From the IMG/VR virus record IMGVR_UViG_3300013094_000017, positions 62,001 through 126,000 of that record: DNA of 64,000 nt, one strand, 5' to 3'. Under the pieces are notes generated by a model, which saw nothing but the letters and a program-made list of their open reading frames with translations, was not told where the DNA came from and did no database searches. Shown here in pieces: positions 2,568-44,713 of the stretch (positions within the stretch are counted from its first letter, which is position 1; each line of letters begins with the position of its first letter). The translations under genes were made by a program, and so were the position numbers.

Positions 2568-3674
2568 ATGAAACCTACAATTTGGATTTTCTCGCTTGAG
2601 CCAATTGAAACCAGATATACAGCACAATGGCATAAACATATTCCAAAACTACTCAAGAACAACTTAGGAGATAAGTTTAATATAGTTCAGGTTGATGGTA
2701 TCCAGAAAGACAGCCAACTTACTCCGGGTGCTTTCTTAAACTTTTCAGATACTAACTATTGGAAAAGTTCGCAATTATGTAATTTTTTAGAGCATCATAA
2801 TAGAGGAGAAACTTCCACCGACGATCACATCCTTTTTACCGACGCTTGGAATCCTACGGTTATCCAACTCAAATATATGAAGGATCTGTTAGGCTTTAAC
2901 TGGACCTTACACGGTATGTTCCACGCGGGGTCATATGATCCTCAGGACTTCTTGGGTAGATTAATTGGTCCTGCGGCTTGGGTTAGAAATGCTGAGAAGA
3001 GCTTCTTTGCAGCCATCGATCACAACTACTTTGCAACTAGATTCCATATAGATATGTTTGTTGACAATCTACTAGAAAATGGAGTACCGCGTGAGAATCC
3101 GTGGGCTGATGAAGATAAAGCAAGTTTGCTTATGAACTATAAGATTGTACGTAGTGGTTGGCCTATGGAATATATGGAACATACCTTAGATATCTATAAA
3201 GGTATGCCCAAGCGCGATCTTATCTTATTTCCTCATCGTATCGCTCCTGAGAAACAGGTTGAGATATTTAGAGATCTAGCACAGGCATTACCGCAGTTCG
3301 AATGGGTTATTTGTCAAGAACAACAATTAACAAAGAACGAATATCACAATCTATTAGGTGAAGCTAAGATGGTGTTTAGTGCTAACCTACAAGAAACATT
3401 GGGCATTAGTATGTACGAAGGTGCATTACTAGATGCTATCCCAATGGTTCCAGACAGATTGAGCTACAGTGAAATGTTTGCTAATGTTTGGAAATACCCA
3501 AGTGAGTGGACAGAATCATGGGACAGCTATCTTACCCATAGAAAAGAACTATGTGAGCTGATCGTTGATTATATGGAAAATTATAACGAGTATGTTAAAT
3601 TTATTAAGCAACAGGCATATAGTTTAACCAAAGAGTTTTTCAATGCTGGACAATTATTAGAGAGATTAAAATGA
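2568..3674 (+). CDS. GT-B fold glycosyltransferase (GT4-like)
   Basis: FPHRIAPEKQ and ETLGISMYEG (E-x7-E nucleotide-sugar-binding motif). Confidence 0.8.
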   Translation: MKPTIWIFSLEPIETRYTAQWHKHIPKLLKNNLGDKFNIVQVDGIQKDSQLTPGAFLNFSDTNYWKSSQLCNFLEHHNRGETSTDDHILFTDAWNPTVIQLKYMKDLLGFNWTLHGMFHAGSYDPQDFLGRLIGPAAWVRNAEKSFFAAIDHNYFATRFHIDMFVDNLLENGVPRENPWADEDKASLLMNYKIVRSGWPMEYMEHTLDIYKGMPKRDLILFPHRIAPEKQVEIFRDLAQALPQFEWVICQEQQLTKNEYHNLLGEAKMVFSANLQETLGISMYEGALLDAIPMVPDRLSYSEMFANVWKYPSEWTESWDSYLTHRKELCELIVDYMENYNEYVKFIKQQAYSLTKEFFNAGQLLERLK

Positions 3675-4441
3675 AGATTGGAATTATCGGATTAGGATTC
3701 GTAGGTGGTGCTGTTAAGGCAGCGCACGATTTAGTAGGTATTGAAACAGTTGATGTAGATCCTCATAAGGGATTGCCAGCAACATTAGCTGATGCTAAAG
3801 CGTGTGATGCTATCTACATCTGCGTGCCTAGCCCTATTGGATCAGATGGTGCTTGCGATACCAGCATCTTAGAAAACGTTATGGAACAGCTAACAGATTA
3901 CACTGGCCCTATCATTAGTAAGGTCACTGCGCCACCTAGCGTATATGTTCGCTTACAAGAAAGTCATAAGAATCTTATTCATGCTCCAGAATTCTTAGTT
4001 GCGGCAACTGCTAACGAAGATTACATCAACGGTACTTATGCCATTATCGGTGGATATGAACCTTATGCTACTCAGGCAGAAGCGGCTATCTTGGCAGCGC
4101 AACGCCGAGTAACTAACATTACTAAGATCGGAATAGGCGAGGCAGCATTAACAAAATATGCTATCAATACATTCTTATCTACAAAAGTTATCTTTATGAA
4201 TGAGCTAAAGGCACTTGCTGACGCTGCTGGAATTGATTACAATGTAGTTAAAGATACTATTCAGTTTGATTCACGTCAGGGTAATAGTCATTTTGATGTA
4301 CCTGGTCCAGATGGTAAGTTTGGATTCGGTGGTGCTTGCTTTCCAAAAGATACTTCGGCATTATTAAAATACGCTGAAGGATTAGGAGTTGAGTTAAGTG
4401 TATTAGCAAGTGCTGTGGCGAAAAATAAAATCATTCGTTAG
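3671..4441 (+). CDS. UDP-glucose/GDP-mannose dehydrogenase family protein, lacking the C-terminal domain
   Basis: GLGFVG Rossmann motif, CVPSP, PEFL, catalytic GFGGACFPKD; only 256 aa. Confidence 0.85.
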   Translation: MKIGIIGLGFVGGAVKAAHDLVGIETVDVDPHKGLPATLADAKACDAIYICVPSPIGSDGACDTSILENVMEQLTDYTGPIISKVTAPPSVYVRLQESHKNLIHAPEFLVAATANEDYINGTYAIIGGYEPYATQAEAAILAAQRRVTNITKIGIGEAALTKYAINTFLSTKVIFMNELKALADAAGIDYNVVKDTIQFDSRQGNSHFDVPGPDGKFGFGGACFPKDTSALLKYAEGLGVELSVLASAVAKNKIIR

Positions 4442-4470
4442 TTGACAGAGCCTAAATAACCCTATATAAT
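4442..4470 (+). promoter_or_regulatory. consensus sigma70 promoter upstream of folE
   Basis: TTGACA-17 nt-TATAAT; the spacer also contains a late-like CTAAATA. Confidence 0.8.
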
Positions 4471-4514
4471 ATTATTAAACATGGCAATCCATCTGCCTTA
4501 TCATCGGAGATAAA

Positions 4515-5213
4515 ATGGTAGCAAAATACACACCAGTTAGCGAAACTATTCGCAACAACTTAAAGAAAGACAACAAACGTTTCTGGGCTGGAGATAACAT
4601 CTCAGAATACATCACAGAAGAAAACAAAGCCCTATTAATTGACGAAGCAACTCTAGCATTTGAAGGTGTGCTTGATACATTGTTAATTGATCGTGAAAAC
4701 GATCCTAACAGTCATGGTACAGCTAGACGTTTAGCCAAAATGTACTTTAATGAGATCATGGCCGGACGTTATGAACCTAATCCAGATGCTACAGCATTTC
4801 CAAATGACAGCGAAGATCGTTATGAAGGTATGCTAGTAGTTCGCAGTGAACTACGCAGTATGTGTAGTCATCATCACCAACCGGTGGCGGGGGTTGCGTA
4901 TATTGGGATTATTGCCGCTCAAAAGCTCATTGGTTTGTCTAAGTACACTCGTATTGCTCAGTGGTGTTCTCGTCGTGGTACTCTACAAGAAGAACTATGT
5001 AATGACATTGCTAGAGAGATTATGAAAGCAACAGGTAGTGAGGATGTAGCAGTTTATATAGAAGCCGAACACGGATGTTGCGTTAATAGAGGCATAATGG
5101 CACATTCGAGCTTAACCCAAACAACTGTATTACATGGTGCGTTTAAGAATGACTCAAGTACCAAAAAAGAGTTCTTTGATAATATCAAACTACAAGCAAG
5201 AAACGGCAAGTAA
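4515..5213 (+). CDS. folE: GTP cyclohydrolase I
   Basis: MCSHHHQP, IGLSKYTR, LQEEL, EAEHGC zinc and substrate motifs. Confidence 0.95.
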   Translation: MVAKYTPVSETIRNNLKKDNKRFWAGDNISEYITEENKALLIDEATLAFEGVLDTLLIDRENDPNSHGTARRLAKMYFNEIMAGRYEPNPDATAFPNDSEDRYEGMLVVRSELRSMCSHHHQPVAGVAYIGIIAAQKLIGLSKYTRIAQWCSRRGTLQEELCNDIAREIMKATGSEDVAVYIEAEHGCCVNRGIMAHSSLTQTTVLHGAFKNDSSTKKEFFDNIKLQARNGK

Positions 5214-5858
5214 ACTAAATCCATTCTCTCTCCAAGTTTTAGAGGAATCGATATTTAGGTGATCAATTTTCTTGCTTGCCCTACCATTGGTCACAGGGTA
5301 AGCATCTAAATTATTATAGATAGTGTTTAATGTCCATTCGGGGATATTTAGAACTTTGTGTATTTCTTTCTTAGTTTTGAATATGCCGACTGGAGTAATG
5401 AATTTGTCTTTCAAAACACGAGGCGGGATGAAGTCTTTGGCAGCTCTATTTGCTTTCCAAGAGTTTAATCGTTTTTCCTGTATTGTAGGATTTTTCATAG
5501 GATTATTAATGAGCATACGCAGACGAACTTGCTCAATAAGTTTGGGGGTAGAAAAAATGTTTTCTTTTCCTCGTCGATATCTAGGGCCATTAAACGCACT
5601 TGATTTATTGAAGAAGCCATAAGCGTGACGCATTTTAATTTCATCTTGGAAATTATCCTGCATTTTGATTAGAAGGCAATGACACACTCGATGTTCTTTA
5701 TAGGTTAAATCTACTAAATTAGTAGGATCGTTTGTTCCACCTAACGATTTAGGAATGATATGATGGCATTGATTAAATTTAGAAGATTTTGTTCTATTTT
5801 CATTTAATGCTCTTGTAATTATTCTATAATATGTTATACTATATTTGTTAGTAATCAT
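5190..5858 (-). CDS. HNH homing endonuclease (MobE-like N-terminus)
   Basis: HHIIPKSLGGTNDPTNLVDLTYKEHRVCHCLL; ATG at 5858 is preceded by GAGG; late-like GATAAATA at 5885-5892. Confidence 0.85.
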   Translation of the reverse strand: MITNKYSITYYRIITRALNENRTKSSKFNQCHHIIPKSLGGTNDPTNLVDLTYKEHRVCHCLLIKMQDNFQDEIKMRHAYGFFNKSSAFNGPRYRRGKENIFSTPKLIEQVRLRMLINNPMKNPTIQEKRLNSWKANRAAKDFIPPRVLKDKFITPVGIFKTKKEIHKVLNIPEWTLNTIYNNLDAYPVTNGRASKKIDHLNIDSSKTWRENGFSLLAVSCL

Positions 5859-5919
5859 AATACGCCTCATAAATTCTATATTATTATTTATCTGGTTGAT
5901 GCGAAAATAGAGGTATTAA

Positions 5920-6135
5920 ATGAACGAGAAGATTAAACAACTTGCTGAACAGGCTGATAATTTTGCTGATGATAAAATTCGGATGCCTGGAGAATATCAC
6001 CCAGATTGGCATGATGTGCGAGATGAAAAGTTTGCCGAGTTGATTGTTAAGGAATGTAGTAATTTCTTGAAAGATACATTGGACGATCATTTTGCGGCAG
6101 AACAGTTAGAAGAACATTTCGGAGTTGAAGAATGA
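5920..6135 (+). CDS. small phage protein (MNE-IK-LAEQA...EKFAELIV-EC...EHFGVE type)
   Basis: 71 aa with GAGG RBS. Confidence 0.75.
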   Translation: MNEKIKQLAEQADNFADDKIRMPGEYHPDWHDVRDEKFAELIVKECSNFLKDTLDDHFAAEQLEEHFGVEE

Positions 6136-6233
6136 ACACAACTGTTCTTAAGGGTGCATTTAAATCTGATCCAGATACTAAGAAAGAGTTCTTTGACAAT
6201 ATTAAACTTCAACAGGAATTTGCTCCAAGATGA
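6132..6233 (+). pseudogene. folE: displaced second copy of the folE C-terminus (33-codon mini-ORF)
   Basis: Translates MNTTVLKGAFKSDPDTKKEFFDNIKLQQEFAPR*, versus TTVLHGAFKNDSSTKKEFFDNIKLQARNGK* in the intact gene. Confidence 0.85.
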
Positions 6234-6466
6234 TAGGCGCTGACGTAGTATGGTTTGGTGTAGGATTAGTCTTTGGAATATTCTTTGGCCTTAACCTTTA
6301 CAATGATCGCAAGGCTAGTGATAAACAAAAGGCCTACGAACAAATAGATGAGCAGGTACGTAAAGATCTTATTCGCTATAAGAACATGAGCGAAAGTTTG
6401 TTAGAAGATGTTAAATTTTGGCGTCATCGCGCTAATACATTAAGAGATATAAAGGAAAAGAAATGA
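6230..6466 (+). CDS. small membrane-anchored hypothetical protein
   Basis: N-terminal hydrophobic stretch VVWFGVGLVFGIFFGL followed by a charged helix. Confidence 0.7.
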   Translation: MIGADVVWFGVGLVFGIFFGLNLYNDRKASDKQKAYEQIDEQVRKDLIRYKNMSESLLEDVKFWRHRANTLRDIKEKK

Positions 6467-6669
6467 CACCTAGCGTAGAAAATATGAAACAAGGAACCTG
6501 CGGTTGTGGACGCAGTTTAAGTGGTGATTGCGATGGCAGTCATGCTTTGAGTGAAGAAATGTGGCAGAATAAACTAGATCAATTAATTCGTGAAGAAAAA
6601 GAACTTAAAGACGAATTAGACGATGACGATATTGACGATAATCACAATGTTAGCAACCAAGGAGGTTAG
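6463..6669 (+). CDS. CDGSH iron-sulfur (NEET-like) domain protein
   Basis: CGCGRSLSGDCDGSH motif with an acidic tail. Confidence 0.8.
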   Translation: MTPSVENMKQGTCGCGRSLSGDCDGSHALSEEMWQNKLDQLIREEKELKDELDDDDIDDNHNVSNQGG

Positions 6670-6672
6670 TAA

Positions 6673-7020
6673 ATGAGTACAGGAATAAGTGTAGGTTATA
6701 AAGAATCAAATCGTTCAAATCGTAGAGAAACCCCAACAGGTAGAGGCATGTTAAAGAACTTAATTATCAAATGGGCAGATGCTATCTATCGTAATGAAAG
6801 CAATAAACTAACTACAATCGAAATGTCTGATCCGAGCATCAATAGCGATAAAGGTATTAACTTTAGTGTGTATAAAGCTAATGGTGGTATGGTAATCGAA
6901 ACACGGTTCTACGATGATAGTAAGGATCGCAATCGTCGTGGCTTATATGTTATTACAGAAGAACAAGATATGGGTCAAGAGATTGCTAAGATCATCACAA
7001 TCGAATCATTAAAACAATGA
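6673..7020 (+). CDS. hypothetical protein
   Basis: 115-aa ORF with GGAGG RBS. Confidence 0.75.
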   Translation: MSTGISVGYKESNRSNRRETPTGRGMLKNLIIKWADAIYRNESNKLTTIEMSDPSINSDKGINFSVYKANGGMVIETRFYDDSKDRNRRGLYVITEEQDMGQEIAKIITIESLKQ

Positions 7021-15789: not shown

Positions 15790-17043
15790 ATGTCAGTAAT
15801 GAAAGCAGAAAAAGTTAAGAAGCCAACAAAGACACGTGAGTATTCACCTGCTGAAAAGAACAAGATTATTGAAAAACTTGTAACTGCTCGGGTTGGGTTG
15901 CTATTACGACATCCTTTCTTTGGCAATATGGCTACACGTATGCAATTAATTGATGCAAGTGATTGGTGTAGTACACTTGCTACAGATGGTCGCAACTTCT
16001 ATTATAACAACGACTTTGTCAGCAAATTAAAGCCTAAAGAAGCAGAGTTCGGATTTGCACACGAAGTATTACATAACGTGTTTGACCATATGGGTCGTAA
16101 AGGTGACCGTGATCATCAATTGTCAAACATTGCCGCAGACTATGCTGTAAATCAAATTCTTAAAGATGAACGCATCGGTGAAGTTCCTAACTGGATCAAA
16201 ATTTTCCAAGACAATAAGTATCGTGGTATGAGCTACGAACAAATTTATGACGACTTGTATCAAAATGCCGAAAAGATCGACATTAGTTCGTTAGGCGAGA
16301 TGTTAGACGAGCATTTAGATGACGGCGAAGGTGAAGACGGTCAAGGCAACGGCGGCGACCAAGAAGGTAAGAGCGGTCGTCCTAAACTAACAGCAGAAGA
16401 AAAGAAAGCTATCCGCGATGAAATCAAAGAAGCTATGGTAGCGGCTGCTCAAAGTGCAGGTGCTGGTAAATTGCCAGCAGGTATCCGCAGATTAATTACA
16501 GACTTTACAGAACCGCAAATGGACTGGCGTGAATTGTTACGTATGAATATCCAAAGCATTATGAAAAGTAACTTTAGTTTTAGTCGTCCAAATCGTAAGA
16601 GCCAACATTCAGGTGCTGTATTACCAGGCATGACTAACGAAGAAACTATTGATGTAAGCGTAGCAATTGATATGTCAGGTAGTATCAGCGATAAGATGGC
16701 TAAAGACTTCTTAAGCGAAGTTAAAGGCATCATGGATGAATACGTTGACTTTAAATTAGACTTATGGTGTTTTGATACACAAGTTTACAACTATGCTAAA
16801 TTCTCAGGCGATACTGCTGACGAAATTATGTCATACGAAGTTAAAGGTGGTGGTGGTACAGACTTCGATGCAAACTACGAGTTTATGAAAGAAAACGAAA
16901 TTGAGCCAAAACGCTTTATTATGTTTACTGATGGATATCCGGCCGGATCTTGGGGGGACGAAAACTATTGCGAATCACTATTTGTTATTCACGGTAATGA
17001 TTCAATTATTCCACCGTTTGGGCAGGTTGCGTATTATAAGTGA
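15790..17043 (+). CDS. metallopeptidase + VWA domain protein (DUF2201-like), AAA+ partner
   Basis: ATDG, HEVLH (HExxH), MIDAS DMSGS, GGGGTDF, FTDG. Confidence 0.9.
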   Translation: MSVMKAEKVKKPTKTREYSPAEKNKIIEKLVTARVGLLLRHPFFGNMATRMQLIDASDWCSTLATDGRNFYYNNDFVSKLKPKEAEFGFAHEVLHNVFDHMGRKGDRDHQLSNIAADYAVNQILKDERIGEVPNWIKIFQDNKYRGMSYEQIYDDLYQNAEKIDISSLGEMLDEHLDDGEGEDGQGNGGDQEGKSGRPKLTAEEKKAIRDEIKEAMVAAAQSAGAGKLPAGIRRLITDFTEPQMDWRELLRMNIQSIMKSNFSFSRPNRKSQHSGAVLPGMTNEETIDVSVAIDMSGSISDKMAKDFLSEVKGIMDEYVDFKLDLWCFDTQVYNYAKFSGDTADEIMSYEVKGGGGTDFDANYEFMKENEIEPKRFIMFTDGYPAGSWGDENYCESLFVIHGNDSIIPPFGQVAYYK

Positions 17044-20513: not shown

Positions 20514-22373
20514 TTAACTTAATTCTGCCCAGAAGGTACAATCTGCTTCACCTTGCCCACCGCCAACATAATATGTTGCGTCAACTGGTACAATGAAAGA
20601 TACTGCATTACCATTATTATTGTTATTATCATGAGACACGTTAAAGAAATATGTGCCATTTACATAAATTTGATAATTCCCACTTCTACCGTATCCTAAC
20701 ATAACCATTATAGGTTTTCCAGTTGAATTTGTATACGTTACTCCACAAGATCTGCTTGGGTTTGACCAAGTTTGTCCTACTCCTAATCCAGAATTAGGTG
20801 CGCTTACCCAAGTAGTACCATTAGATGTTAATACACGCCCACTTGCACCGGGTGCTACTGTCTGTAATGCAGATGTACCGTTACCTAATAATACTGAATT
20901 AGCAGTTAACGAGTTAGTTCCTATACCACCATTTGCCACAGTTAATGCAGATGCTAGGCTAGATACAGTAACATTGCTAATAGTACCTCCATTAATTGCA
21001 GCAGTTGAGGCAATTAACGAATTAACATTTAATGTGCTGCCTGAGCCAACTGTCCAATTTCCAGTAAGTGTGCCAGCCGTTGTTGGACTACCTGTGGTAA
21101 TATTTTGTGAAATAATATTTAAAGTGCTTCCAGCATTAACTGACCAATTCCCTGTTATTGTTCCGGCAGTTGTTGGCGATCCGCTTGTGATAAATTGACT
21201 AGTAACATTGCCTGCAACATTGCCTGCAACATTACCTGTAACATTGCCTGTTACATTACCTGTTAGGTTTCCGGCAAAGGTTGCTGCTACGGTATTAAAT
21301 GTCCCAGCATTGGCTGTAATATTAGTAGCAGTTACCGTAACTGCGGTCATTGTAGTTGCATAAATCCCTGCAAATTTATTGTTAGGATTACCAATATATA
21401 CCGGCGGAACATTTGATCCTGAGCCAGGCAATAATGAATTACCATCAATCATTAAGATGTTAGTTGTGGTATTATTGTATTGTAAATTGAAAGATATTTT
21501 AGTAGCATTTACTCCGGTCATCTTACCTTCAGAGTTACCGTGATCTGCGTGGAATCTAAATACCCCGCCTACTCCAACCAAAATACCATCATCAGTCGGT
21601 ACATTTAATCCGATTGAAAAATCATTTTGGTAAGTTGATTTTAACAAGAAATCACCCGGAGCATAACTTCTAGTATTATCTACTAGTCCTAATGCAGAAG
21701 ATGCAGTACCCCACAAATAATATCCAGATCCGTTCATGGTGCTGTTAGCTGATATACCAGAAGCATCAGTATCCGCTAATGTGATTCCTTTTCTAAGGGT
21801 AGGAAAATCTCCGTAGAACGATGTGGCAGTATTTACGCTGATATCTTCTGATGCCAGCACTGCTACTACAACATTAGAAGATCCGATTGGAACAATATGT
21901 TGTTCTACATAATGATTATTACCCAAGGAATCTTGTATAGTGGTTAATCCTTGACTTCCGCCACTTCCGCCGCTTCCGCCCGATGTAGACGGACCTACTG
22001 CTAGCCATTTTTTGCCAGTGTAGACATTTAACACGCTTTGGCTTTGATCAAACCATAGATCCCCTGTGGTTAAATTAGTAGGAGAGCTGCCGTTACTTGA
22101 ATATGAAGTATATGCTAGTGACACAAAATTTGTACCGTCAAATACTTTTAATTTTTTGTTAGTAGAATCATACCATAATTGGCCTGTAATAGCCTTAGGT
22201 GGTTGCGCTTTATTAGCAAAGTTTTCTAATAAATGTAAGAAATTTGTATCAATGAATCCGCCGTATCCAGCATAATTCTTACCAACAAATGTCAGGTCAG
22301 TTGATTGATTTATCGAACCGTCTTGAACAGTTGCTAGTGTAGATCCATTTGTTTTATTCAGTATGTATGGCAT
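20514..22373 (-). CDS. tail fibre protein
   Basis: Shared N-terminal VGKN..G...LLENFA...GQLWYD domain, GNVT repeats, C-terminal GVGQTW...YTNSTGKPIMV domain. Confidence 0.75.
   Translation of the reverse strand: MPYILNKTNGSTLATVQDGSINQSTDLTFVGKNYAGYGGFIDTNFLHLLENFANKAQPPKAITGQLWYDSTNKKLKVFDGTNFVSLAYTSYSSNGSSPTNLTTGDLWFDQSQSVLNVYTGKKWLAVGPSTSGGSGGSGGSQGLTTIQDSLGNNHYVEQHIVPIGSSNVVVAVLASEDISVNTATSFYGDFPTLRKGITLADTDASGISANSTMNGSGYYLWGTASSALGLVDNTRSYAPGDFLLKSTYQNDFSIGLNVPTDDGILVGVGGVFRFHADHGNSEGKMTGVNATKISFNLQYNNTTTNILMIDGNSLLPGSGSNVPPVYIGNPNNKFAGIYATTMTAVTVTATNITANAGTFNTVAATFAGNLTGNVTGNVTGNVAGNVAGNVTSQFITSGSPTTAGTITGNWSVNAGSTLNIISQNITTGSPTTAGTLTGNWTVGSGSTLNVNSLIASTAAINGGTISNVTVSSLASALTVANGGIGTNSLTANSVLLGNGTSALQTVAPGASGRVLTSNGTTWVSAPNSGLGVGQTWSNPSRSCGVTYTNSTGKPIMVMLGYGRSGNYQIYVNGTYFFNVSHDNNNNNGNAVSFIVPVDATYYVGGGQGEADCTFWAELS
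21024..21272 (-). repeat. coding repeats: a 90-nt duplication plus a 12-nt GNVT/GNVA tandem array
   Basis: ITSGSPTTAGTITGNWSV / ITTGSPTTAGTLTGNWTV; GNLT-GNVT-GNVT-GNVA-GNVA-GNVT. Confidence 0.8.
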
Positions 22374-22387
22374 TGTTTTAACCTATT

Positions 22388-24169
22388 TTATCTAAATTCT
22401 ACCCAATTAATAATTGTTTGACCATCTGAGAGGTTGTTTACTGGTTCATCCGGGCAATAGATATTAATATAGTACGATGCTCCGGGAGGAACAAAAAACT
22501 GTAATGTCATCCATCCTAAATAAGTCGGTCTCCCTGTTTGATTTACGGCCTCTCTCGTGACTTCTACTCCATTTACGTAAGCAATGGACCAAATAGCAGC
22601 ATCTTCAGTATCAGAAGTAATATCAGCTGAACTTACAGTAGCATTTACCCAAATTACGTTACCAGTTCCATTAGTGTAGGGTGTTCCAAATGTCCTAGCT
22701 CCGGTTACATTCTGATAAGATTGTCCTACTCCAAATCCAGAATATGAATAAGATCCACCTAGAGGTACTGGAATTCCATTCATTGTAATACTTGAATTGT
22801 TTAAGGATGTGTTAGGTATACCAGTAACTTTTGTTCCTGCTAATCCTGTAATCCAACTTGGATTATTATACGAGCCGTTAGTATAAACACCGTAAGTAAC
22901 TGTACCGGCGTTACCTGATACATTGCCTGTCACATTGCCTGTTACATTACCCGTTACATTACCCGTCACATTGCCAATAACACTGCCTGTGTGTGTACCA
23001 CTGGTATCACTCCAAACTACTCCTGCGCCGGTGCGTTGAACAATTTTATCTGCCACTGGAGGTACCGATGCGTTAGGTAAATTGTTTATTTGATTTTGTG
23101 TATTGCTAATTGCATTATCGATGTATAATTTAATAGCTTTTTGCGTTGGGATCCTATCATCGCCATTATGAGCAAATGTAGGATCAGTGTCCCAGCGTGC
23201 TATACTCAACAGCGTAGGATCTGTTAATGCTGTGAAACTAACGCTATTGGCATTTACTGTAGGTGCATCAATTGCGTAGGTCCAGATAGTGTTCCATCGT
23301 AATCCCGAACTGCCTAAATTTGCACCATTGTTTGCTACTGGACTCAGTCCATTTAATACATTCCATGTTCCAGCTAATTGGCTTGAATTAGTAGGTGATA
23401 TTAATTTGTTAGCAGTTACAGAACCTGCTTGAATATTTCCGCTTCCGTCTCTTTGTACAATGGTATTAGCCTGAGTTGATGTCGATGCTAGAACATAAGA
23501 TGTAGCACCATCATTTAACAATGCGTTAGCATTAGTAGCATATAGACTAGTGCCAGTTAATGTAGCATCTGTATTGCCCGCAATGTTACCATTTTTAAGT
23601 GTTATACCTTTATGTATATGAGATATGCCAGAGATTAAATTAGTAGATGACGTAACAAAGTCATCGCCACTTATTACATAAATTACTTGATCATTTACTA
23701 ATGCTTCAATAACAGGATGTGCTACATCAGCAGTGTCTAATAATGATACAGATATAAGTCTTGTAGGATTAAATCCCGGAGCTTTCTCTGGTCCAATTAA
23801 AGTAAATCCTGTACCAGTGTTAATGAATAATTGATTGTTAACGCTATCATACCACAAATTACTTGCCGACGATGCTCCGGAGGTAGATGTACTATATGAC
23901 ATCACTGCCAAAGTTTGCCATTGTGTTTCGTTATAAACTTTCAATACATTGTTAGTTTTATCAAACCATAATTGGCCTGTTAGTTTATTTGCTGGTTCTG
24001 TAGCAGCCGCAAAATTTTCTAATAAATGTAAGAAATCATTGTTCTGTATCTCACCAAACTTTGAAACATTTTTACCAACAAACGTGATACTAGACGAAAC
24101 ACTGTCAGTAAATCCGTCTGCTAATTCTAATAGTATCGTGCCGTCTGATTTTGTAATTTGGTATGCCAT
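22388..24169 (-). CDS. tail fibre protein
   Basis: Same N-terminal domain; GNVT repeats at about 22910-22990; C-terminal GVGQSY...YTNGTG domain. Confidence 0.75.
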   Translation of the reverse strand: MAYQITKSDGTILLELADGFTDSVSSSITFVGKNVSKFGEIQNNDFLHLLENFAAATEPANKLTGQLWFDKTNNVLKVYNETQWQTLAVMSYSTSTSGASSASNLWYDSVNNQLFINTGTGFTLIGPEKAPGFNPTRLISVSLLDTADVAHPVIEALVNDQVIYVISGDDFVTSSTNLISGISHIHKGITLKNGNIAGNTDATLTGTSLYATNANALLNDGATSYVLASTSTQANTIVQRDGSGNIQAGSVTANKLISPTNSSQLAGTWNVLNGLSPVANNGANLGSSGLRWNTIWTYAIDAPTVNANSVSFTALTDPTLLSIARWDTDPTFAHNGDDRIPTQKAIKLYIDNAISNTQNQINNLPNASVPPVADKIVQRTGAGVVWSDTSGTHTGSVIGNVTGNVTGNVTGNVTGNVSGNAGTVTYGVYTNGSYNNPSWITGLAGTKVTGIPNTSLNNSSITMNGIPVPLGGSYSYSGFGVGQSYQNVTGARTFGTPYTNGTGNVIWVNATVSSADITSDTEDAAIWSIAYVNGVEVTREAVNQTGRPTYLGWMTLQFFVPPGASYYINIYCPDEPVNNLSDGQTIINWVEFR

Positions 24170-24179
24170 TCTTTATTCC

Positions 24180-26036
24180 TTATGAGACAATGCTGCCGCC
24201 TTGCCATACTAATGTTCCAGACTGATTAATCACAAGGTATTCTCTAACTACTCTAGTAACTGTTGGAACAATTATTGTCGAAGCCGGAATAATACCAGCT
24301 AGGCCGGATTGTATTATCACTGTCTGTGTATTATTGTTAATATCTTTTACCTGAACACCGCTTGAATTTAATGTAATCAATTGTTGAGGACTAGCAGGTA
24401 CAGCAATTGATAAATTTGTACATATTACTCGTACTCGTGTGCCTTCACCTAAATTAAGGTATTCGTACGGTGATGGGTTATAAATTGGAAGAGCTAGATT
24501 TAGATATGGTAGAATATCTATTGCCGGATCAGCCATGCCTGTTGTATCAATTGAGAATGTAAATCCTTTTGATCCTACCAATTGTAGTCCAGCATCAACA
24601 TAGGTTTTATTTGTAGCATCATATGGGCCTGTTGGGATTGCTACGCTAGTAATTCTATTACCGGTAGCATCTACTGTGCCCGTGCCTGTTCCTGATAGAT
24701 ATAATGTTTTATTAGTTCCAGTTGCTTGAACGGTACTGTCATGTATCGTTACATTAGTAACTGTTAGAACAGACAGTATACCTAAACTCGTTAATCCTGG
24801 TGCAGACTTGATAACATTGCCCAGCGATGTTGCATTAACTACTGCGTTACCGCCAATTAAGTACGAACTAGCAGTTGAGGTAATGTTAGTATTATCATTA
24901 AAGTTCCACCCTGACCCGTTATTAACCCAGGTAATGGTATGATCAGTTGTGCCGTGTAAGGTAATACCGCCGCCTGTGGCTACGCTATCACTTGGACTAC
25001 TTTGTCCGTAGGCTAATTCTATATTCTTATCATTAATCTGTAAATTTGTAGATTGTACATTAGTAACATTACCTTGTACAACTAAATTGCCTTGTATGCG
25101 AGTATCGCCATTAATATCTACAGGATACTGAGGAATTTCTGTAAATAGGCCAACTCGTTCATTTAATGAGTCTACAGCCAATGCTGTGAAATATGCCACA
25201 GTGCTGTTTTTACTGCTAACTCCGCGAATACGTAATAGAGAATCAGTAGTATCATGCACTATGTTAGTACTGGTACTATCAACATAAATTTGTAAGTTTT
25301 GATTATTGCCAACATACAATCCAGGATTATCACTTCTAATACTTAATCCGCCAACTAAGGTTTGATCTCCTGTGTTTGCTAGATATGAATTTGGACTAAA
25401 TCCCTGCACTGAATCTGCGCTGGTTGCTGTACCTACGAATCGTATTCCCGGAATAGATTGATTTAGATTAAATCCAGGTTGTACTGAATTCATTCCATTA
25501 TGTGCAACTTCAAAGGTAAATGGTATTGCTGAGGCAATTCCCAGCAATGCGTTATTACTGTATAATGAAGCAACCACTTGAGAATTTTTAGCAGTGTCTG
25601 TTATAGTTTCTACTAACCATCCAGATTTTCCGCTGACTGCTGAATACTGCGGTCCTACTAATGTGAAGTTTGTACCATCTGGGGTAAAGTATAATTGATT
25701 ATTTCCAGAATCGATCCACAAATCGCCTTGATTAGCAATAGTAGGTTGTGTTGGTGTAACCTGCGCACCTGCTACTGGTTTGAATACTTTATCCATACCA
25801 TATACATACATACGGCCGTCAACTTTGTTGTACCATAATTGCCCAACGATCGGACTGCGCGGTTGATTTAATCCGGCAAAGTTTTCTAACAATCCTACAA
25901 GATCATTATTAAGATACTGACCGTATGAATCTACGTTCTTTCCTATTAATGCTAAACTGGTAGTAAGTTGATCAACCTTAGTATCACTCAAGGTTAATAA
26001 GATTGTTCCATCTGTTCGTGTAATTGTATATGACAT
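24180..26036 (-). CDS. tail fibre/baseplate-associated structural protein
   Basis: Same N-terminal domain; DATNKTYVD fibre motif. Confidence 0.7.
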   Translation of the reverse strand: MSYTITRTDGTILLTLSDTKVDQLTTSLALIGKNVDSYGQYLNNDLVGLLENFAGLNQPRSPIVGQLWYNKVDGRMYVYGMDKVFKPVAGAQVTPTQPTIANQGDLWIDSGNNQLYFTPDGTNFTLVGPQYSAVSGKSGWLVETITDTAKNSQVVASLYSNNALLGIASAIPFTFEVAHNGMNSVQPGFNLNQSIPGIRFVGTATSADSVQGFSPNSYLANTGDQTLVGGLSIRSDNPGLYVGNNQNLQIYVDSTSTNIVHDTTDSLLRIRGVSSKNSTVAYFTALAVDSLNERVGLFTEIPQYPVDINGDTRIQGNLVVQGNVTNVQSTNLQINDKNIELAYGQSSPSDSVATGGGITLHGTTDHTITWVNNGSGWNFNDNTNITSTASSYLIGGNAVVNATSLGNVIKSAPGLTSLGILSVLTVTNVTIHDSTVQATGTNKTLYLSGTGTGTVDATGNRITSVAIPTGPYDATNKTYVDAGLQLVGSKGFTFSIDTTGMADPAIDILPYLNLALPIYNPSPYEYLNLGEGTRVRVICTNLSIAVPASPQQLITLNSSGVQVKDINNNTQTVIIQSGLAGIIPASTIIVPTVTRVVREYLVINQSGTLVWQGGSIVS

Positions 26037-26048
26037 AGTCTTCTATTC

Positions 26049-27800
26049 TTAATATTTAATCATGTATCTAACCACATAGGTCGAAGTGTTCACCGAGTTC
26101 GATGGAACAATATTGTTTAAGTTTGGAACATTAAATGACGCAGGTCCTGTCTGTCCGTATGGCAGAGTTGTACCTCCTAATGCTGTATATAGCGCACTGT
26201 AAATTCCACTTGAACTATAAGAGGCACCATCACACCATAACCATCCGGAAGGAGGAGTTGTACCAATAGTAGGAGATAACATTATAAATCCAGGATACAC
26301 TATATTAGTATATACATCAGATAAGAAATTTTGTTTATTAATCTTATACGGTGTAGCAGTAGGTGATTGACTTGGATCTGATATAAGCATTGTCCAAGTT
26401 CCCGCAGCGGAAGTTGCCGTTGTCTGCGCAGAAATCGAAGAATTATTTAAGGTAGCAACTAAATTAATCGCTTGTGTTCCGTTAAACGCCTGTTGATCAG
26501 CAGTAACCTGTCCAGATATTGAAAATGCTCTCGGGTTGGTTAATTGGTCAGCAGTGTATGCCGATCCTTCTAATCTTGTTGTGCCTGTTCCGATGTAATC
26601 AACCCACACTCTACGGAAGTGATTATCAATTGTTCCTAGATCATAGGTTGACGGTGTAGAAGGAATTATTGCTGCGCTGGTATTGGTTGATGATACTGAT
26701 ATTGTGTCAACAAACGTTGAATTAGCAGTAACCGTTAGGTTACGATTAAGTTGTACATCACTGCCAACTGTTACTGAGCCAGTAACCTTTAATGCATTTG
26801 TAATTGTAGTAATTCCAGAAATTAATACAGTTCCATTAACATCTAATGTAGCATTTGGATTAGAATTAACGCTGTTAATACCAACACGTTGATTTTGTCC
26901 AGATATCGTTAATATACTGTTACGTATACCATTACTATCAATCTTAAAGATAATATTAGCAGAATCAGCAATATTTGTTATAACTGCATCTTGCCCTGTT
27001 TTGGTTAACAGGAAAGTAGACGAAGTTAATCCAATGCTTAGGCCGCCATTATTGTTTATTGTTAGTACTTCAGTTAATGATTGTGGTATATCTTTTCTAA
27101 AGAAACTATTAGCTGAAATTACCTGTGTAGCAGGCACCGTTACCGCCAATGCTGCTGCCTGAGTAGCAACACCATTAAATGTTGGTGCTATTCCGTTGTA
27201 TAATTGTGTGCTTAGATTCACCCCCGGAGTTAATAAATTAAATCCTTCAATAACCGCAGATGGTCTAAATGAATCTTGAGCAATAATAGTAAGCACATTG
27301 CCATTAAGATAATTTTTGATTACGTAATGATATGCTCCGTCGGTTCCTAGAATCGAATCTGGATAATTACCAGTTTGATATGTTGAACTAAAACTTGGTC
27401 CAACTAAGGTAAAACTACTACCATTCCAAATGTTTAATTGATTATATGTTGTGTCAACCCAAATATCACCCAATCTAGCATTAGTAGGTGCTGTTAGTGT
27501 TCTAAATACTCCGCCTAGTTCTGGCGAATTGCTGTTTAAACCAGACCCGTCATTGATACGTAATCTTTTGTTTACACTGTCTGATGTATCATACCAAAGT
27601 TGTCCTTCAGTGGTGTTAGTTGGAGGTGTAGGTGCTGCAAAATTTTCTAATAAATGTAATAAATCACTAGCGATCACTGGTCCAAATCCAGAAGCATTGC
27701 GGCCAACTAGGCCTATACTGGTACTATAATCAATAGTACCTGTATTGATGGTAATAGGTGTTTTAGAAAGATCTGAATGATTTATTGTATATGCTGACAT
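26049..27800 (-). CDS. short tail fibre protein with a tail-collar domain
   Basis: Same N-terminal domain; C-terminal PSGWLWCDG...YSALY...FNVPNL...YMIKY collar motif. Confidence 0.8.
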   Translation of the reverse strand: MSAYTINHSDLSKTPITINTGTIDYSTSIGLVGRNASGFGPVIASDLLHLLENFAAPTPPTNTTEGQLWYDTSDSVNKRLRINDGSGLNSNSPELGGVFRTLTAPTNARLGDIWVDTTYNQLNIWNGSSFTLVGPSFSSTYQTGNYPDSILGTDGAYHYVIKNYLNGNVLTIIAQDSFRPSAVIEGFNLLTPGVNLSTQLYNGIAPTFNGVATQAAALAVTVPATQVISANSFFRKDIPQSLTEVLTINNNGGLSIGLTSSTFLLTKTGQDAVITNIADSANIIFKIDSNGIRNSILTISGQNQRVGINSVNSNPNATLDVNGTVLISGITTITNALKVTGSVTVGSDVQLNRNLTVTANSTFVDTISVSSTNTSAAIIPSTPSTYDLGTIDNHFRRVWVDYIGTGTTRLEGSAYTADQLTNPRAFSISGQVTADQQAFNGTQAINLVATLNNSSISAQTTATSAAGTWTMLISDPSQSPTATPYKINKQNFLSDVYTNIVYPGFIMLSPTIGTTPPSGWLWCDGASYSSSGIYSALYTALGGTTLPYGQTGPASFNVPNLNNIVPSNSVNTSTYVVRYMIKY

Positions 27801-27804
27801 TTAA

Positions 27805-28461
27805 TTAACTTCCGTTAGTTAGACTTTGAATTCTAACTGTGTAATCTATCTGTATCATTCTGTTCAATGCTTTTTGTACAGGATGGAAAATAACATGAGT
27901 TAGCAATGGGCCTGTATTAGCACCAGCTGAACTGTATCCTCGCAATCCTAACTCATCAAACACAAATGTACCGTCTTGGTTTACGCTGGTGTCAAACGCT
28001 GCTTGACCACTTGGTTCGCCAAAGTCCAATAAGCAAGTAACTAATACATCCGAATAAGGTGTACCAGGTACATGACGAACTTCCATAAAGTTCCTAGATG
28101 GGTCAACATCATACGGACTTTGACCATCTACTATTTTGTAATATTGTTGGTTGTATAAGGCTGCATTAGATCCAACAGTGTTTGGTGTCAAATATGTAAT
28201 AATGCCAGTTGGATCAACTCTACTACCACCGTTGCCAAATGCCATTTCAGAAATAAATCCACCGTTGTTTGAGATGCTGTTAGCCAATGCTATTGAAAAG
28301 TTTTCATAGTGAATAGCATTACGCTTGTCTACGAATACTTCCTTAGTCTCAGGATCATGTATTTTGATGTGTCCTTGGATACGTACTGTTCCCATTTCGT
28401 TAGGTTTTTTTGTATTATTTTCCATAGTTTCTTTCATCTTTTCAGTTTTAGACTTGTCCAT
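27805..28461 (-). CDS. virion structural protein
   Basis: 218 aa within the tail module; FDELGL...LTHVIFHPVQK; late-like GATAAATA at 28467-28474. Confidence 0.6.
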   Translation of the reverse strand: MDKSKTEKMKETMENNTKKPNEMGTVRIQGHIKIHDPETKEVFVDKRNAIHYENFSIALANSISNNGGFISEMAFGNGGSRVDPTGIITYLTPNTVGSNAALYNQQYYKIVDGQSPYDVDPSRNFMEVRHVPGTPYSDVLVTCLLDFGEPSGQAAFDTSVNQDGTFVFDELGLRGYSSAGANTGPLLTHVIFHPVQKALNRMIQIDYTVRIQSLTNGS

Positions 28462-31400
28462 AGTGATATTTATCCGGAAGGGCAGCCTGTCTATCTCGCA
28501 AGAACGTAGCTACTGCGCCAGTATCGTTCAATAGAGATGTTGCGGTACTTGCGTACCAATCTTTAGCGGTTTGTTGTACAAGGGTGATTGCAGTACCTGT
28601 GTTTAATCTGCCTGCAGGCACATTTAATGTCAGAACATTATTTGTGCCGGACGATGTGATAGTAAATTCAGGTGGTAGATAATTTAATCCCTGATACACA
28701 AATCCGTTTACCGCAGATAAATCTAGCGAGTTAGTATATACCCATACTTGGTTTGTTGATGTAACCAAATAAGCATTACCTATCACAGTTGTATTAGGTA
28801 GCGCAGTTGAAGTAGAAATTGTTCCTACAATAGTAGCAGTTACATTGTCGTATAATACCGACATATCGTGAACATACATTCCATCTTTACGTAGTGGTAT
28901 ACCACCTTGATATACGCGAACTTGGTGTACAGATGCAGTTGACGTATTGAATACTATGCCATTACCTTTGGTGTTGGTCATATTCTCAATTACATAGGCA
29001 ATATCTAATGGGCTTGGAACTACAGCAGTACTAACATTCACAGTTTCAGTATATGGCATTATTTGACGCACACCCTGATCTAATACCTCAGTACCTACTG
29101 GATAACCATCTCTTGCTCCGGTTCCTAATGTAGCACGTTTAAGTCTTGATAATGTATTGCCACTCATTGCCATATATTCAATACGTTCGCCAGCAATTAA
29201 TATAACGCCTGGAGCATTTTTTGCTGGATTAGGCACTGATAAATCGCTTGCCTCATCTACCACAATTGTAGTAGAAGTAGTATATAACGGCTCAGCTAGA
29301 TTTGTACTATTTGTTTCGCTTATGCGTTTGAATGTTGTACGATTTAATATATCTTTAAATTGACGATATGCTATCACTGTGTTATCTGACACATCAGTCA
29401 TACTCATTACAACTATTGTATCAGTAGATTGAATTGGATAATTATCATCAACAACTACTGTTTTATTATCAGTATCGATATAATAATCAAGACCGTTAGT
29501 TAACGGTGTTCCGTTAATTGTTACCCATACATAATTGTCATTAAGTACCGCACGATTCATTGTGTATCTTCTTAATGTTCCTGATGTGAATACTTCTGTT
29601 CTAATCATATCACTATCTTGATTTGTGTACGTTGTGACTTTAAGTATTCCGCCTTCTGGAATTGCAAGTCTGTTGGTATTCAATATAATTTGACCATTAT
29701 CAAAATAGTACTGACTATAAACAGTATTAGTAATTGCAACCGCATCACCTGTTTTCAAGATGCCTGGACGGAATACAATTAATTTATTAGGTTGATCTAA
29801 AATAAAATCAGCACCATTTTGAATTTGTATTCCGTTGACAAATACCTGCAATGCGCCTAATGAAAATACGCCTGCTGGATAATTGCTGTTTGGATCAATT
29901 TCAAATACCGTTTGATTAGCTGCCGCAGAATAATATGCAGTGTTTGGTGGTATTAATCTAAGTTTATTCAATTCAACAATTGCTTGAGCATTAATTGGTC
30001 CAATCACGCCAGGATACTGGGTAAGAGTATACGCAGTAGTAGCAGATGATGTAACAAATATTTGGTCTTTTACTTCACTGTAGCCTTTGTATGCTGCTTC
30101 GAATACCCACACCTGTAATGTATTTGTACCTGTTAATCCCGAAACAGTAACACCTTTACCATTTAATTTATATTGGTCTGATGTTATTGGATTACCATTT
30201 AATGTTACATATAGACTTCCAATATCTGCCAATGGTACTCCTACTGGGACTGTAATTGAAGATTTAGTTGATGTAGCATAATCGTAAGACGAGTACGCTG
30301 CACCTCCAATTCCTACGTTAGTCACAGCAACTACTCCTGTTGAAGTTTGTGTAGATATTGTAATAGTATTATTATTGAAGTCAATAGTATAATCGGTACC
30401 GTAGTTTAATATACCGCGATTATATGATACCATTAATGATGATGTATTTGCTGGTAACATAGACAACGAAACAGTAGTAGAAGTTGTTGTTGTGCTTACT
30501 AAGAATGTATTCTGTGAGATCATAGGTGATCCACTCGGCACTCGGGTGTAAACACTAATACCAACACTTTCAACTACTTCGCCTGGTACTAATTCTTCAG
30601 GACCGTGGCTTACATTTGGCGATAAGAATTGATCTCCATCAACAATTAGATCTTCTGGATTTAAACCAGTTGCCATTGTATAGGCTAGATCACCACCGTC
30701 GATAATAGTATCAAGTGATGCTTCACCATTGCCACCATCGTCCCATGCTGCTTCAGTAAATGGTAACATGTCCCAGTTTGAAGTGTAGGCAAATGGCAAT
30801 GTTTGAATTTGTGTACCTGGATAATCTACTCCTGTCATTACTTGAGCAGGATCTGCTCCTGGCATACCATCCGTCGGTGCATAGTAATCTTGAATACGAT
30901 CAGCAGCATGGTATAAATTAATATTTTTGTTGTAGGTAATATCTAATATCTGTCCTTTATTAGGAACAGATGTTAGTACCAATGTAGAATATAATTTATG
31001 ATATCCGTTAGATACTTGTGTATAAGTTACTATATCATAATCTAAAGCAAAAATCTTAATACCATCTAATGTGATTTCAATTTCTGATTTTTTGTTTTCA
31101 GCTGCCCAAGATAGAGGGAATTGATAAGTGCTGCCATCACAGAAGAACTGATCTGCGGCCTGCTTATTACCAATCTCTCTAAGACCAGTAACACGGTCAA
31201 ATCGTATATCAATTTTATTAGTACGCACTTTTCCGTTGGCTAATTGAGCATAGGCACGAGCTTGTACAACACCAGTCGACCCGCCGCCAGTTAATACCAC
31301 AGTAGGGGTTTGTGTATATCCACTGCCGGGATTGGTTACCTCAATTTCAATTACCTTGCCTAATGATATATAAGCAATTGCAGTAGCAGGGTCTGTGATT

Positions 31401-44692: not shown

Positions 44693-44713
44693 AGTGTTTT
44701 CTCATTGATACCG

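What the first reader, a model, noticed from the sequence alone, without database searches (positions are those of the whole stretch)
5121..6233. Homing endonuclease cassette appears to have replaced the folE 3' end and stranded the original
Seen: folE ends TTVLHGAFKNDSSTKKEFFDNIKLQARNGK* (5121-5213). About 1 kb downstream is TTVLKGAFKSDPDTKKEFFDNIKLQQEFAPR* (6138-6233), a diverged copy with many synonymous changes. Between them lie an antisense HNH gene overlapping the new folE end by 24 nt and a 71-aa passenger ORF. The stranded copy has an in-frame ATG (ATGA overlap at 6132) and its stop overlaps the next start (ATGA at 6230), so it may be kept as a translational-coupling peptide. Inference: intronless homing into folE, with a recoded 3' end conferring immunity to cleavage.
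Basis: partly seen in the sequence, partly recalled or inferred. Interest (0 to 1): 0.62.

Follow-up and report, generated by a model that had tools for sequence, protein, structure and literature searches.

The report
Homing endonuclease displaced phage folE end
A selfish HNH nuclease gene has moved into the tail of a lake phage's folE gene, bringing a foreign folE end with it and leaving the original end as an orphan piece 1 kb downstream; this layout is known from fungal mitochondria, but I found no description of it in phages.

Summary
folE (4515-5213) ends in ARNGK. An antisense HNH gene (5190-5870) overlaps it by 24 nt. A 71-aa ORF follows, then a 75-nt, 76%-identical second copy of folE codons 203-227 that ends in QQEFAPR and overlaps the next gene's start.

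- **Empty site:** 68 nuclease-free relatives all end folE in the QQEFAPR type.
- **Chimeric folE:** the 5' part and the orphan copy match the same nuclease-free relatives at 87-94% nt. From about codon 150 onward folE is foreign.
- **Recent transfer:** the foreign part plus the HNH gene is 98% identical to a divergent phage (L082) whose flanks are only 55-75% identical.
- **One clade, one site:** all 20 close HNH relatives with enough flanking sequence sit tail-to-tail with folE. They carry orphan pieces of 8-46 codons, or decayed nuclease relics.

Two corrections follow. The duplicated stretch has no allele-specific recoding. The fixed differences lie upstream, in the catalytic motif (codons 183-192, 5061-5090), and in the last five codons. 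The 71-aa ORF is not part of the recently moved block. It belongs to a widespread small-gene family whose conserved 3' end supplies the orphan's ribosome site and ATG.

This is a new variant of a known kind.

The parts
4442..4470 (+). Promoter-like site in front of folE, a perfect match to the sigma-70 consensus (12 of 12 bases, 17-nt spacer)
   Evidence: Nucleotide homology to nuclease-free relatives L001-L006 starts exactly at 4442. This is a consensus match only; function was not tested.
4515..5213 (+). folE (GTP cyclohydrolase I), a chimeric gene with a resident 5' part and a foreign 3' part
   Evidence: Pfam PF01227 covers residues 59-224. Against five nuclease-free relatives, divergence roughly doubles to the right of a breakpoint at codon 120-180 (max chi-square, permutation p<=0.002). 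Nuclease-free pairs show no comparable doubling.
4970..5935 (.). Recently transferred block: the last ~240 nt of folE, the whole HNH gene, and the HNH-orf71 spacer
   Evidence: This stretch is 93-100% identical to L082 in 60-nt windows, against 55-75% in the flanks. The W/L082 breakpoint is at codon 150, with divergence 0.197 to the left and 0.020 to the right. Contigs covering 4988-5243 and 5214-5935 at >=99% identity occur in two further lake studies (X9, X10), where the window's flanks are not seen.
5061..5090 (+). Candidate target and immunity patch: folE codons 183-192, over the catalytic H-G-C-C-x-N-R-G motif
   Evidence: Apart from the new terminal codons, this is the only cluster of strongly differentiated columns in the aligned gene. 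Codon 183 is Q in 68 of 68 nuclease-free alleles and E in 18 of 18 nuclease-linked alleles. Codon 190 is E in 68 of 68 nuclease-free alleles and mostly T, V, I or L in linked alleles. Arg192 is CGN against AGR, and Cys189 is TGT against TGC. That this patch is the cleavage target is an inference.
5121..5195 (+). Live (donor-derived) copy of the repeat, folE codons 203-227
   Evidence: It is 99% identical to L082's live copy and at most 78% identical to any nuclease-free allele.
5196..5213 (+). New folE terminus ARNGK plus stop, read opposite the 3' end of the HNH gene and lying beyond the Pfam domain
   Evidence: The same type of end (SRNGK/N, ARNGN) is found in 16 nuclease-linked or relic loci and in none of 68 nuclease-free loci.
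5190..5870 (-). Free-standing HNH endonuclease gene (226 aa; 222 aa if it starts at 5858)
   Evidence: Pfam HNH and phrog_655 match. The motif positions H36, H37, N51, H60 and H64 are invariant in 7 relatives, and all 7 match PF01844. Of 21 relatives at >=42% identity, 20 lie tail-to-tail with folE; the 21st (L094) stops at its contig end before any folE could appear.
5920..6135 (+). orf71, a member of a widespread family of small phage genes of unknown function
   Evidence: No Pfam or PHROG match. The Atlas clusters it falls in are all viral. Homologues at 41-44% aa hold the same position in L082, L093 and L100; others lie away from folE in L010, L013 and L067. The family's ends are conserved, its middle is variable, and it is abundant in lake runs.
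6115..6135 (+). Conserved 21-nt 3' end of the orf71 family, holding GGAG, an ATG and the TGA stop in one ATGA
   Evidence: It is identical in W, L082, L093, L100 and L065 although the orf71 bodies are only ~42% aa identical. It is also present, with 1-3 changed bases, at orf71-family copies away from folE (L010:3164, L067:6588). In lake contigs, many different sequences follow position 6135 (table 7).
6132..6233 (+). Orphan native folE 3' end (codons 203-232 from 6138), kept as a 33-codon ORF
   Evidence: Over 78 nt it is 94% identical to L004's live end and 90% to L002's. It is contiguous with orf78, as in L001.
6230..6466 (+). orf78, the resident gene that follows folE in nuclease-free relatives
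   Evidence: It is 91% aa identical to the gene directly after folE in L001, and 92% to the one in L092.

Best explanation
A free-standing HNH homing endonuclease gene entered a resident folE gene of the QQEFAPR type by break-induced recombination with a nuclease-carrying phage. That repair copied the donor's folE from about codon 150 to a new ARNGK end, together with the tail-to-tail HNH gene. The resident last 30 codons were left intact downstream, in front of their original neighbour orf78. These points are shown: the empty-site allele, the chimeric folE, the recent horizontal sharing of the folE-3'/HNH block, the fidelity of this HNH clade to the folE site, and a full series from intact to decayed nucleases. 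These points are inferred. (a) The nuclease cuts nuclease-free folE at or near codons 183-192, in the catalytic motif ~110 nt upstream of its own insertion point, and the fixed differences there protect carrier alleles. (b) Orphan pieces of different length (46, ~38, 31-35 and 8-10 codons), all starting downstream of that patch, reflect variable resection of the right-hand broken end before it was joined. (c) In the window, a W-type HNH block replaced an older nuclease inside an existing orf71-orphan cassette, with the right-hand crossover in the 5' part of orf71. (d) The orphan persists because it carries the ribosome site and ATGA start of orf78, is itself translated from orf71's coupling signal, and may also give the cassette a right-hand homology arm that does not depend on which gene follows folE.
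For: - Empty site: window 6148-6466 matches L001 4424-4743 at 89% in one piece. All 68 nuclease-free alleles kept for the allele comparison end in a QQEFAPR-type terminus.
- Chimerism: max chi-square gives p<=0.002 against five nuclease-free relatives, and nuclease-free pairs show no comparable doubling of divergence. In the 5' third the nearest rows are the nuclease-free L005, L002, L003 and L004. In the 3' third they are L082, then L016 and L021.
- Horizontal transfer: window 4970-5810 is 93-100% identical to L082 against 55-75% in the flanks. UGDH is 63% aa and orf78 47% aa identical between the two. The same block occurs at >=99% identity in other lake studies where the window's flanks are not seen.
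- Site fidelity: 20 of 21 HNH relatives at >=42% identity lie next to folE. More distant relatives lie elsewhere.
- Life cycle: intact genes are seen in W, L082, L021, L083, L084 and L087. C-terminal relics are seen in L085, L007 and L053/59, a deletion in L065 and a decayed orphan in L098.
- Patch: strongly differentiated columns are confined to codons 183-192 and 228-232.
- Orphans look like local resident alleles and do not cluster with one another.
- Coupling signals.
- The phage has T4-type baseplate genes and the gp46/47-like recombination nuclease needed for break repair.
- No intron RNA family is found.
Against: - No cleavage data exist, so the target site is inferred from allele association only.
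- The 18 nuclease-linked alleles may share descent for this segment. The fixed amino-acid differences at codons 183, 185 and 190 could then be lineage markers held by protein-level selection rather than immunity.
- Three linked alleles (L087, L053, L059) keep E190, although they carry C189V instead.
- Nucleases of the second C-terminal type sit beside folE alleles that keep the nuclease-free form of the motif core (HGCCENRG) and, in four of seven loci, a QQEFAPR-like end (L080, L097, L101, L091). Their target, if any, must differ.
- orf71 is only 42% identical between W and L082, so one-step transfer of the whole cassette did not happen between these two.
- Short-segment trees were poorly resolved and the AU tests were uninformative.
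- The ratio of nonsynonymous to all changed codons in orphans (0.32) equals that of live ends (0.26). Selection on the orphan peptide is therefore neither shown nor excluded.
Confidence: 0.8

Rival explanations
1. The orphan copy is a neutral relic with no function of its own. It looks intact only because each invasion is recent, or because each homing event re-copies it from a live resident gene. It will decay like any pseudogene.
For: Orphans sit among live nuclease-free alleles rather than forming their own group. Their synonymous/nonsynonymous make-up equals that of live ends. Older examples decay: L098 has an in-frame stop, L084 has changes at otherwise invariant positions, L087 lost a codon, and L021 has an internal deletion.
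Against: All six orphans preceded by orf71 keep an ATG, an open frame and the terminal ATGA, although there are four different junction variants differing by 0, 3 or 6 nt. At least the last 8-10 codons, which hold the AGGA/AGGAG upstream of the next gene's ATG, are kept in most carrier loci.
Confidence: 0.4
2. The ARNGK/SRNGK allele is simply an old folE lineage with an HNH neighbour. The window's layout arose by ordinary illegitimate and homologous recombination between co-infecting phages, without nuclease-driven homing. The HNH gene may be inactive or may serve another role.
For: Phage genomes in this group are highly mosaic downstream of folE. No cleavage evidence exists. Sequence alone cannot tell a recombination patch from homing.
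Against: The HNH motif is intact and conserved. The clade is tied to one site across divergent genomes. The shared 98% block coincides with the nuclease gene plus the adjacent folE stretch. The new-type end never occurs without a nuclease in 11 of the 16 such loci, and 4 of the other 5 keep a relic of the nuclease, of orf71 or of the old end; only L010, L016 and L040 show little or none. Presence, relic and absence states follow the pattern expected for homing genes.
Confidence: 0.1
3. The nuclease recognises its own insertion point (folE codons ~225-230), as intron-borne HNH enzymes do. Immunity then comes from the disrupted junction.
For: The junction after ...LQ is constant in all W-type loci. 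Codons 228-232 are the most differentiated columns.
Against: The window's orphan holds an unbroken native copy of codons 203-232, including that junction with 75 nt of upstream context. Such an enzyme would therefore cut its own genome. This explanation also does not account for the second cluster of fixed differences at codons 183-192, or for orphans that start at codon 187 (L087).
Confidence: 0.15

Closest known systems
[quoted passage not shown]
   Same: The gene is a free-standing HNH gene lying between conserved genes of a T4-like phage. Its presence is sporadic, and flanking gene sequence is co-converted. The inferred cut lies at a distance (~110 nt) from the insertion point, in a nucleotide-metabolism gene.
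   Different: Here the insertion lies inside the last codons of the target gene, tail-to-tail and overlapping it by 24 nt, so it rewrites the protein's C-terminus. It also leaves a displaced native 3' end. A text search of the T4 review for 'duplicat', 'remnant' and 'pseudogene' found nothing. No cleavage data exist for this enzyme.
Mobile endonuclease ORFs (mORFs) with carboxy-terminal duplication in fungal mitochondria: Allomyces macrogynus atp6; Glomus atp6, atp9, cox2, nad3 (PMC3630166)
   Same: The anatomy is the same: a foreign C-terminus in phase with the host gene, then an endonuclease gene, then the native C*-terminus. The native piece is much closer to relatives (91-98% there, 88-94% here) than the inserted one (64-81% there, 74-78% here).
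   Different: Those are organelle genomes with endonucleases of another family, in most cases in phase with the host gene. Here the genome is a phage, the endonuclease is HNH and sits on the opposite strand, an extra small gene lies between the nuclease and the orphan, and the orphan is set up as a translated mini-ORF.
Gene splitting by homing endonuclease insertion (mobE in Aeh1 nrdA; mobA in T4 topoisomerase genes 39/60) (PMC2988022)
   Same: The nuclease gene is inserted within a coding region of an enzyme gene, leaving two coding pieces.
   Different: In the split genes both pieces are needed and reassemble into one enzyme. Here the upstream gene is complete by itself, with a substituted end, and the downstream piece is redundant.
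Replacement of one homing endonuclease by another at the same locus (SegH/Hef replacing mobC/mobE; Sandegren et al. 2005, known to me and listed among the references of PMC12724721)
   Same: Two nuclease variants with different C-terminal domains occupy the same site in related phages. The window's block looks like a replacement inside an older cassette.
   Different: Both variants here share the same HNH domain family. The replacement is inferred from identity boundaries only.

Membership tests
HNH homing endonuclease (free-standing) | HNH beta-beta-alpha metal nuclease motif intact | tested here: met
   Pfam PF01844 scores 23.3 bits against a cut-off of 21.4. All 7 aligned relatives match. 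H36, H37, N51, H60 and H64 are invariant. The best PDB sequence matches are HNH motifs of other enzymes, and only weakly.
HNH homing endonuclease (free-standing) | Sporadic presence at one homologous site, with an empty-site allele in relatives | tested here: met
   Of 80 folE loci, 70 are nuclease-free with a QQEFAPR-type end. L001 shows the empty site with the same downstream gene.
HNH homing endonuclease (free-standing) | Horizontal spread together with co-converted flanking target sequence | tested here: met
   A 98% identical block (the folE 3' ~240 nt plus HNH) is shared with L082 in a 55-75% background. Breakpoint tests support this, and other lake runs hold the block.
HNH homing endonuclease (free-standing) | Site-specific cleavage of the nuclease-free allele and resistance of the carrier allele | not testable with these tools
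   Only an association is available: the fixed differences at codons 183-192.
HNH homing endonuclease (free-standing) | Separate DNA-binding domain attached to the nuclease domain | tested here: inconclusive
   Residues ~100-226 are conserved among W-type relatives, and the second type has a different C-terminal part. No Pfam domain was detected there. No structure was predicted.
Mitochondrial mORF elements with C-terminal duplication | Foreign C-terminus in phase, endonuclease ORF, native C-terminus retained downstream and closer to relatives | tested here: met
   compared with PMC3630166.
Mitochondrial mORF elements with C-terminal duplication | Mitochondrial element whose endonuclease ORF lies on the host gene's strand, usually in phase with it | tested here: not met
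   The endonuclease here is of the HNH family, lies on the opposite strand, and is in a phage genome. This is an analogue, not a member.
Intron- or intein-borne homing endonuclease | Self-splicing RNA structure or an in-frame intein around the nuclease gene | tested here: not met
   No Rfam family matches 4300-6800 at E<=1. folE ends at a stop codon and the nuclease is on the opposite strand.

The most novel reading that the evidence does not exclude
The HNH gene, the foreign folE end, the orf71 gene and the orphan folE end form a self-contained homing cassette. The orphan would be a portable right-hand homology arm, letting the cassette enter any QQEFAPR-type folE whatever gene follows it. 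orf71's coupling end together with the orphan would restore translation of the downstream gene that the antisense nuclease cut off from folE. The nuclease would target the catalytic-motif codons, where carrier alleles show escape-type substitutions (E190 to T, V, I or L). In this reading the displaced gene end is a working part of the selfish element, not debris.
Probability: 0.3. Interest if true: 0.72.

Novelty: new variant of a known kind. Interest (0 to 1): 0.58.

Why it matters
The locus shows, with population-scale natural replicates, how a homing nuclease can rewrite the end of an essential-pathway gene without killing it. It records the whole life cycle at one site: empty site, invasion, replacement by a second nuclease type, decay and deletion. 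It also provides a concrete, cheaply testable candidate target, a 30-bp patch over the GTP cyclohydrolase I catalytic motif, and a candidate natural "homology arm plus expression repair" design. For annotation, it warns that short gene-end fragments beside phage HNH genes are footprints of homing, and that the neighbouring gene may be a chimera.

Tried and rejected
- **Segment trees and AU tests.** Trees of the folE 5' and 3' segments with AU tests were uninformative. The quick searches missed better trees and the segments are short and saturated. I relied on pairwise breakpoint statistics instead.
- **Public phage records.** Similarity search found only distant folE genes (67-68% nt) and a 75-nt HNH match. 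No isolated relative is available.
- **Solved structures.** The HNH alignment gave only weak matches to the HNH motif of unrelated enzymes, and nothing for the C-terminal half.
- **Selection on the orphan peptide.** The test could not separate selection from recent origin.
- **Other nuclease genes in this genome.** A search for similar flanking duplications around the four other HNH-type genes found none.
- **Population polymorphism.** A search for a nuclease-free variant of the window genome in public runs listed no joint from ~5195 to ~6212. Contigs drop rare variants, so this says nothing about absence.
- **Literature.** Searches for a phage precedent found none in the held library. Subscription papers are not covered.
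- **Tandem folE duplication.** A tandem duplication of a whole folE gene followed by decay is rejected. The orphan is contiguous with orf78 exactly as in the empty-site allele, and no upstream folE remnant precedes it.
Full report
**1. What is there**

The window comes from a 259-kb single-contig phage genome. It has T4-type baseplate genes and a gp46/47-like recombination nuclease. Its sequence turns up in lake and freshwater metagenomes from 14 studies. The features at 4515-6466 are:

- **folE**, 4515-5213 (+): GTP cyclohydrolase I, Pfam E=1e-40, behind a perfect sigma-70-like promoter at 4442-4470.
- **HNH gene**, 5190-5870 (-): overlaps the folE end by 24 nt. Its likely start is 5858.
- **orf71**, 5920-6135 (+).
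- **Orphan ORF**, 6132-6233 (+), 33 codons: codons 3-33 repeat folE codons 203-232.
- **orf78**, 6230-6466 (+).

The repeat is 75 nt at 76% identity. Of the 14 codons that differ, 10 are synonymous. Independent assemblies confirm the layout. No RNA family, and so no group I intron, is detected.

**2. The empty site and the chimera**

Eighty related folE loci were fetched.

- 70 of the 80 loci carry no nuclease and end folE in a QQEFAPR-type terminus, the type seen in the orphan. 68 of them entered the allele comparison.
- In L001 that end overlaps, through an ATGA, the start of a gene 91% identical to orf78. Window 6148-6466 aligns to L001 4424-4743 at 89% in one piece.
- The orphan is 94%, 90% and 87% identical to the live ends of L004, L002 and L005. 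These are the same relatives that are 86-88% identical to the window's folE 5' third.
- The window's live end is at most 78% identical to any nuclease-free allele.
- Max chi-square tests against five nuclease-free relatives place a breakpoint at codon 120-180 (p<=0.002), with divergence roughly doubling to its right. Pairs of nuclease-free alleles show no comparable doubling; in two pairs the 3' part is the less divergent one.

**3. Evidence for movement**

L082 is a 158-kb contig from another sample. It has the same gene order but a divergent background: UGDH is 63% aa identical, orf78 47% aa, and the flanks 55-75% nt. Yet window 4970-5810 is 93-100% identical to it. Identity decays across 5810-5980, into orf71, which is only 42% aa identical. 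Two further lake studies hold contigs of 4988-5243 and 5214-5935 at >=99% identity, while the window's flanks are not seen there. The unit that moved recently is therefore the folE 3' ~240 nt plus the HNH gene.

**4. A nuclease clade tied to folE**

A profile scan found 21 loci with HNH relatives at >=42% identity. Twenty of them lie tail-to-tail with folE, and the remaining contig ends before folE could be seen. More distant relatives share only the nuclease domain and lie elsewhere. There are two C-terminal types, "W-type" and "8-type". The carrier loci show every stage:

- **Orphans of different length.** 46 codons (L087/88, starting at GCCEN); about 38 codons (L084); 31-35 codons preceded by an orf71 homologue (W, L082, L093, L100, L091); 8-10 codons (L021, L092, L008, L053/59).
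- **Decay.** A decayed orphan with an in-frame stop (L098). Nuclease relics of 10-30 codons that survive where they overlap folE (L085, L007, L053/59). One deletion that removed the nuclease and most of orf71 but kept both folE ends (L065).
- **A neighbour with the other nuclease.** L092 is the closest backbone relative on the orf78 side (92% aa). It carries the other nuclease type with a short orphan and no orf71.

**5. Where immunity probably lies**

I compared 68 nuclease-free alleles with 18 nuclease-linked alleles column by column over the aligned gene (codons 12-232). Strongly differentiated columns occur in only two places: codons 183-192 and the new terminal codons 228-232. None occur in codons 193-227, which include the whole repeat. 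The patch (window 5061-5090) covers the catalytic H-G-C-C-x-N-R-G motif. It includes:

| Codon | Nuclease-free alleles | Nuclease-linked alleles |
|---|---|---|
| 183 | Q, 68 of 68 | E, 18 of 18 |
| 190 | E, 68 of 68 | mostly T, V, I or L (3 of 18 keep E) |
| 192 (Arg) | CGN | mostly AGR |
| 189 (Cys) | mostly TGT | mostly TGC |

From my own knowledge of the E. coli enzyme, the variable residues align with non-ligand positions next to the zinc-binding cysteine.

Two further points favour a target in or near the patch rather than at the insertion point.

- The orphan contains an unbroken copy of the insertion-point region. An enzyme aimed there would cut its own genome.
- Every orphan starts downstream of the patch (codons 187, ~197-201, ~223-225). 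That fits one break site with variable resection of the right-hand end.

This is inference from association. Shared descent of the linked alleles is a real alternative explanation.

**6. orf71 and the orphan's reading frame**

The 21 nt before the orphan (6115-6135) are identical in W, L082, L093, L100 and L065, although the orf71 bodies have diverged. The same motif, with 1-3 changed bases, ends orf71-family genes that lie far from folE (L010, L067). It contains GGAG, an ATG and the family's TGA stop. The orphan's start signals are therefore donated by orf71's native coupling end.

- Four junction variants, differing by 0, 3 or 6 nt, all keep the orphan in frame.
- In nuclease-free genomes the folE stop usually overlaps the ATG of whatever gene follows, with an AGGAG or AGGAA inside the last folE codons.
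- The minimal retained remnant can thus be explained as the next gene's ribosome site. The longer open frame is consistent with a coupling chain from orf71 through the orphan to orf78.
- Selection on the peptide itself is not shown.

Orphans resemble local resident alleles and do not cluster with one another. That fits either repeated new invasions or re-copying of the orphan from the recipient during homing. The second possibility is the basis of the "portable homology arm" idea.

**7. Comparison with what is known**

Intronless homing of free-standing HNH and GIY-YIG genes, with co-conversion from a distant cut, is textbook for T4 (PMC2988022). Gene splitting by such insertions is also known. 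The arrangement of a foreign C-terminus, an endonuclease and a retained native C-terminus is described for fungal mitochondrial mORFs (PMC3630166). I found no phage description of it in the held library.

I rate this a new variant of a known kind. The core history carries confidence of about 0.8. The target patch is at about 0.5, and a function for the orphan at about 0.4-0.6.

Noticed in passing
window 28448-41260 (-): A single 4270-aa ORF lies next to baseplate genes (41276-50493), presumably a giant structural or fibre protein.
   Followed up: no
window 20514-27800 (-): Four consecutive ORFs of 583-619 aa. Only the first was scanned; it has a virion-structural N-terminus. They look like a tandem paralogue array, possibly alternative fibres or receptor-binding proteins.
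   Followed up: no
window 5920-6135; lake runs X1, X3, X9, X10: The orf71 family has conserved 5' (~57 nt) and 3' (~21-38 nt) ends and a hypervariable middle. It is very abundant in lake metagenomes: word depth over 6017-6170 runs from the hundreds to the thousands in three of the four runs, with dozens of 'skip' joints between the conserved ends. This looks like a shufflable small-gene module.
   Followed up: partly
window 4442-4470: A perfect 12-of-12 sigma-70 consensus promoter lies before folE. Nucleotide homology to relatives L001-L006 begins exactly there, so the promoter-folE unit may itself be a module boundary.
   Followed up: partly
window 15790-17043 (+); genome C1 ~58.7 kb, ~132.6 kb, ~209.1 kb: The genome holds a 417-aa protein matching phrog_1314 ('HNH endonuclease') and three further paralogues of the folE-linked HNH nuclease domain. 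None has a flanking gene-end duplication.
   Followed up: yes
L091 (oriented 3193-4835); L080/L089, L097, L101: 8-type HNH genes overlap by 32 nt a folE end that still reads QQDF(S/A)PR. In L091 an orphan copy is present as well. Here the nuclease seems to have taken over the native end without changing the protein much.
   Followed up: partly
L021 7304-7435 against L087 (oriented 2947-3168): The short orphan of L021 looks like the 46-codon orphan of L087 with an in-frame internal deletion: both share the upstream ...GCC(E/K)NSGI junction. Orphans therefore shrink stepwise while staying in frame.
   Followed up: partly
window 52787-56486 (+): SbcD/SbcC-like (T4 gp47/gp46-type) recombination nuclease genes, the machinery that break-repair homing depends on in T4.
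   Followed up: no
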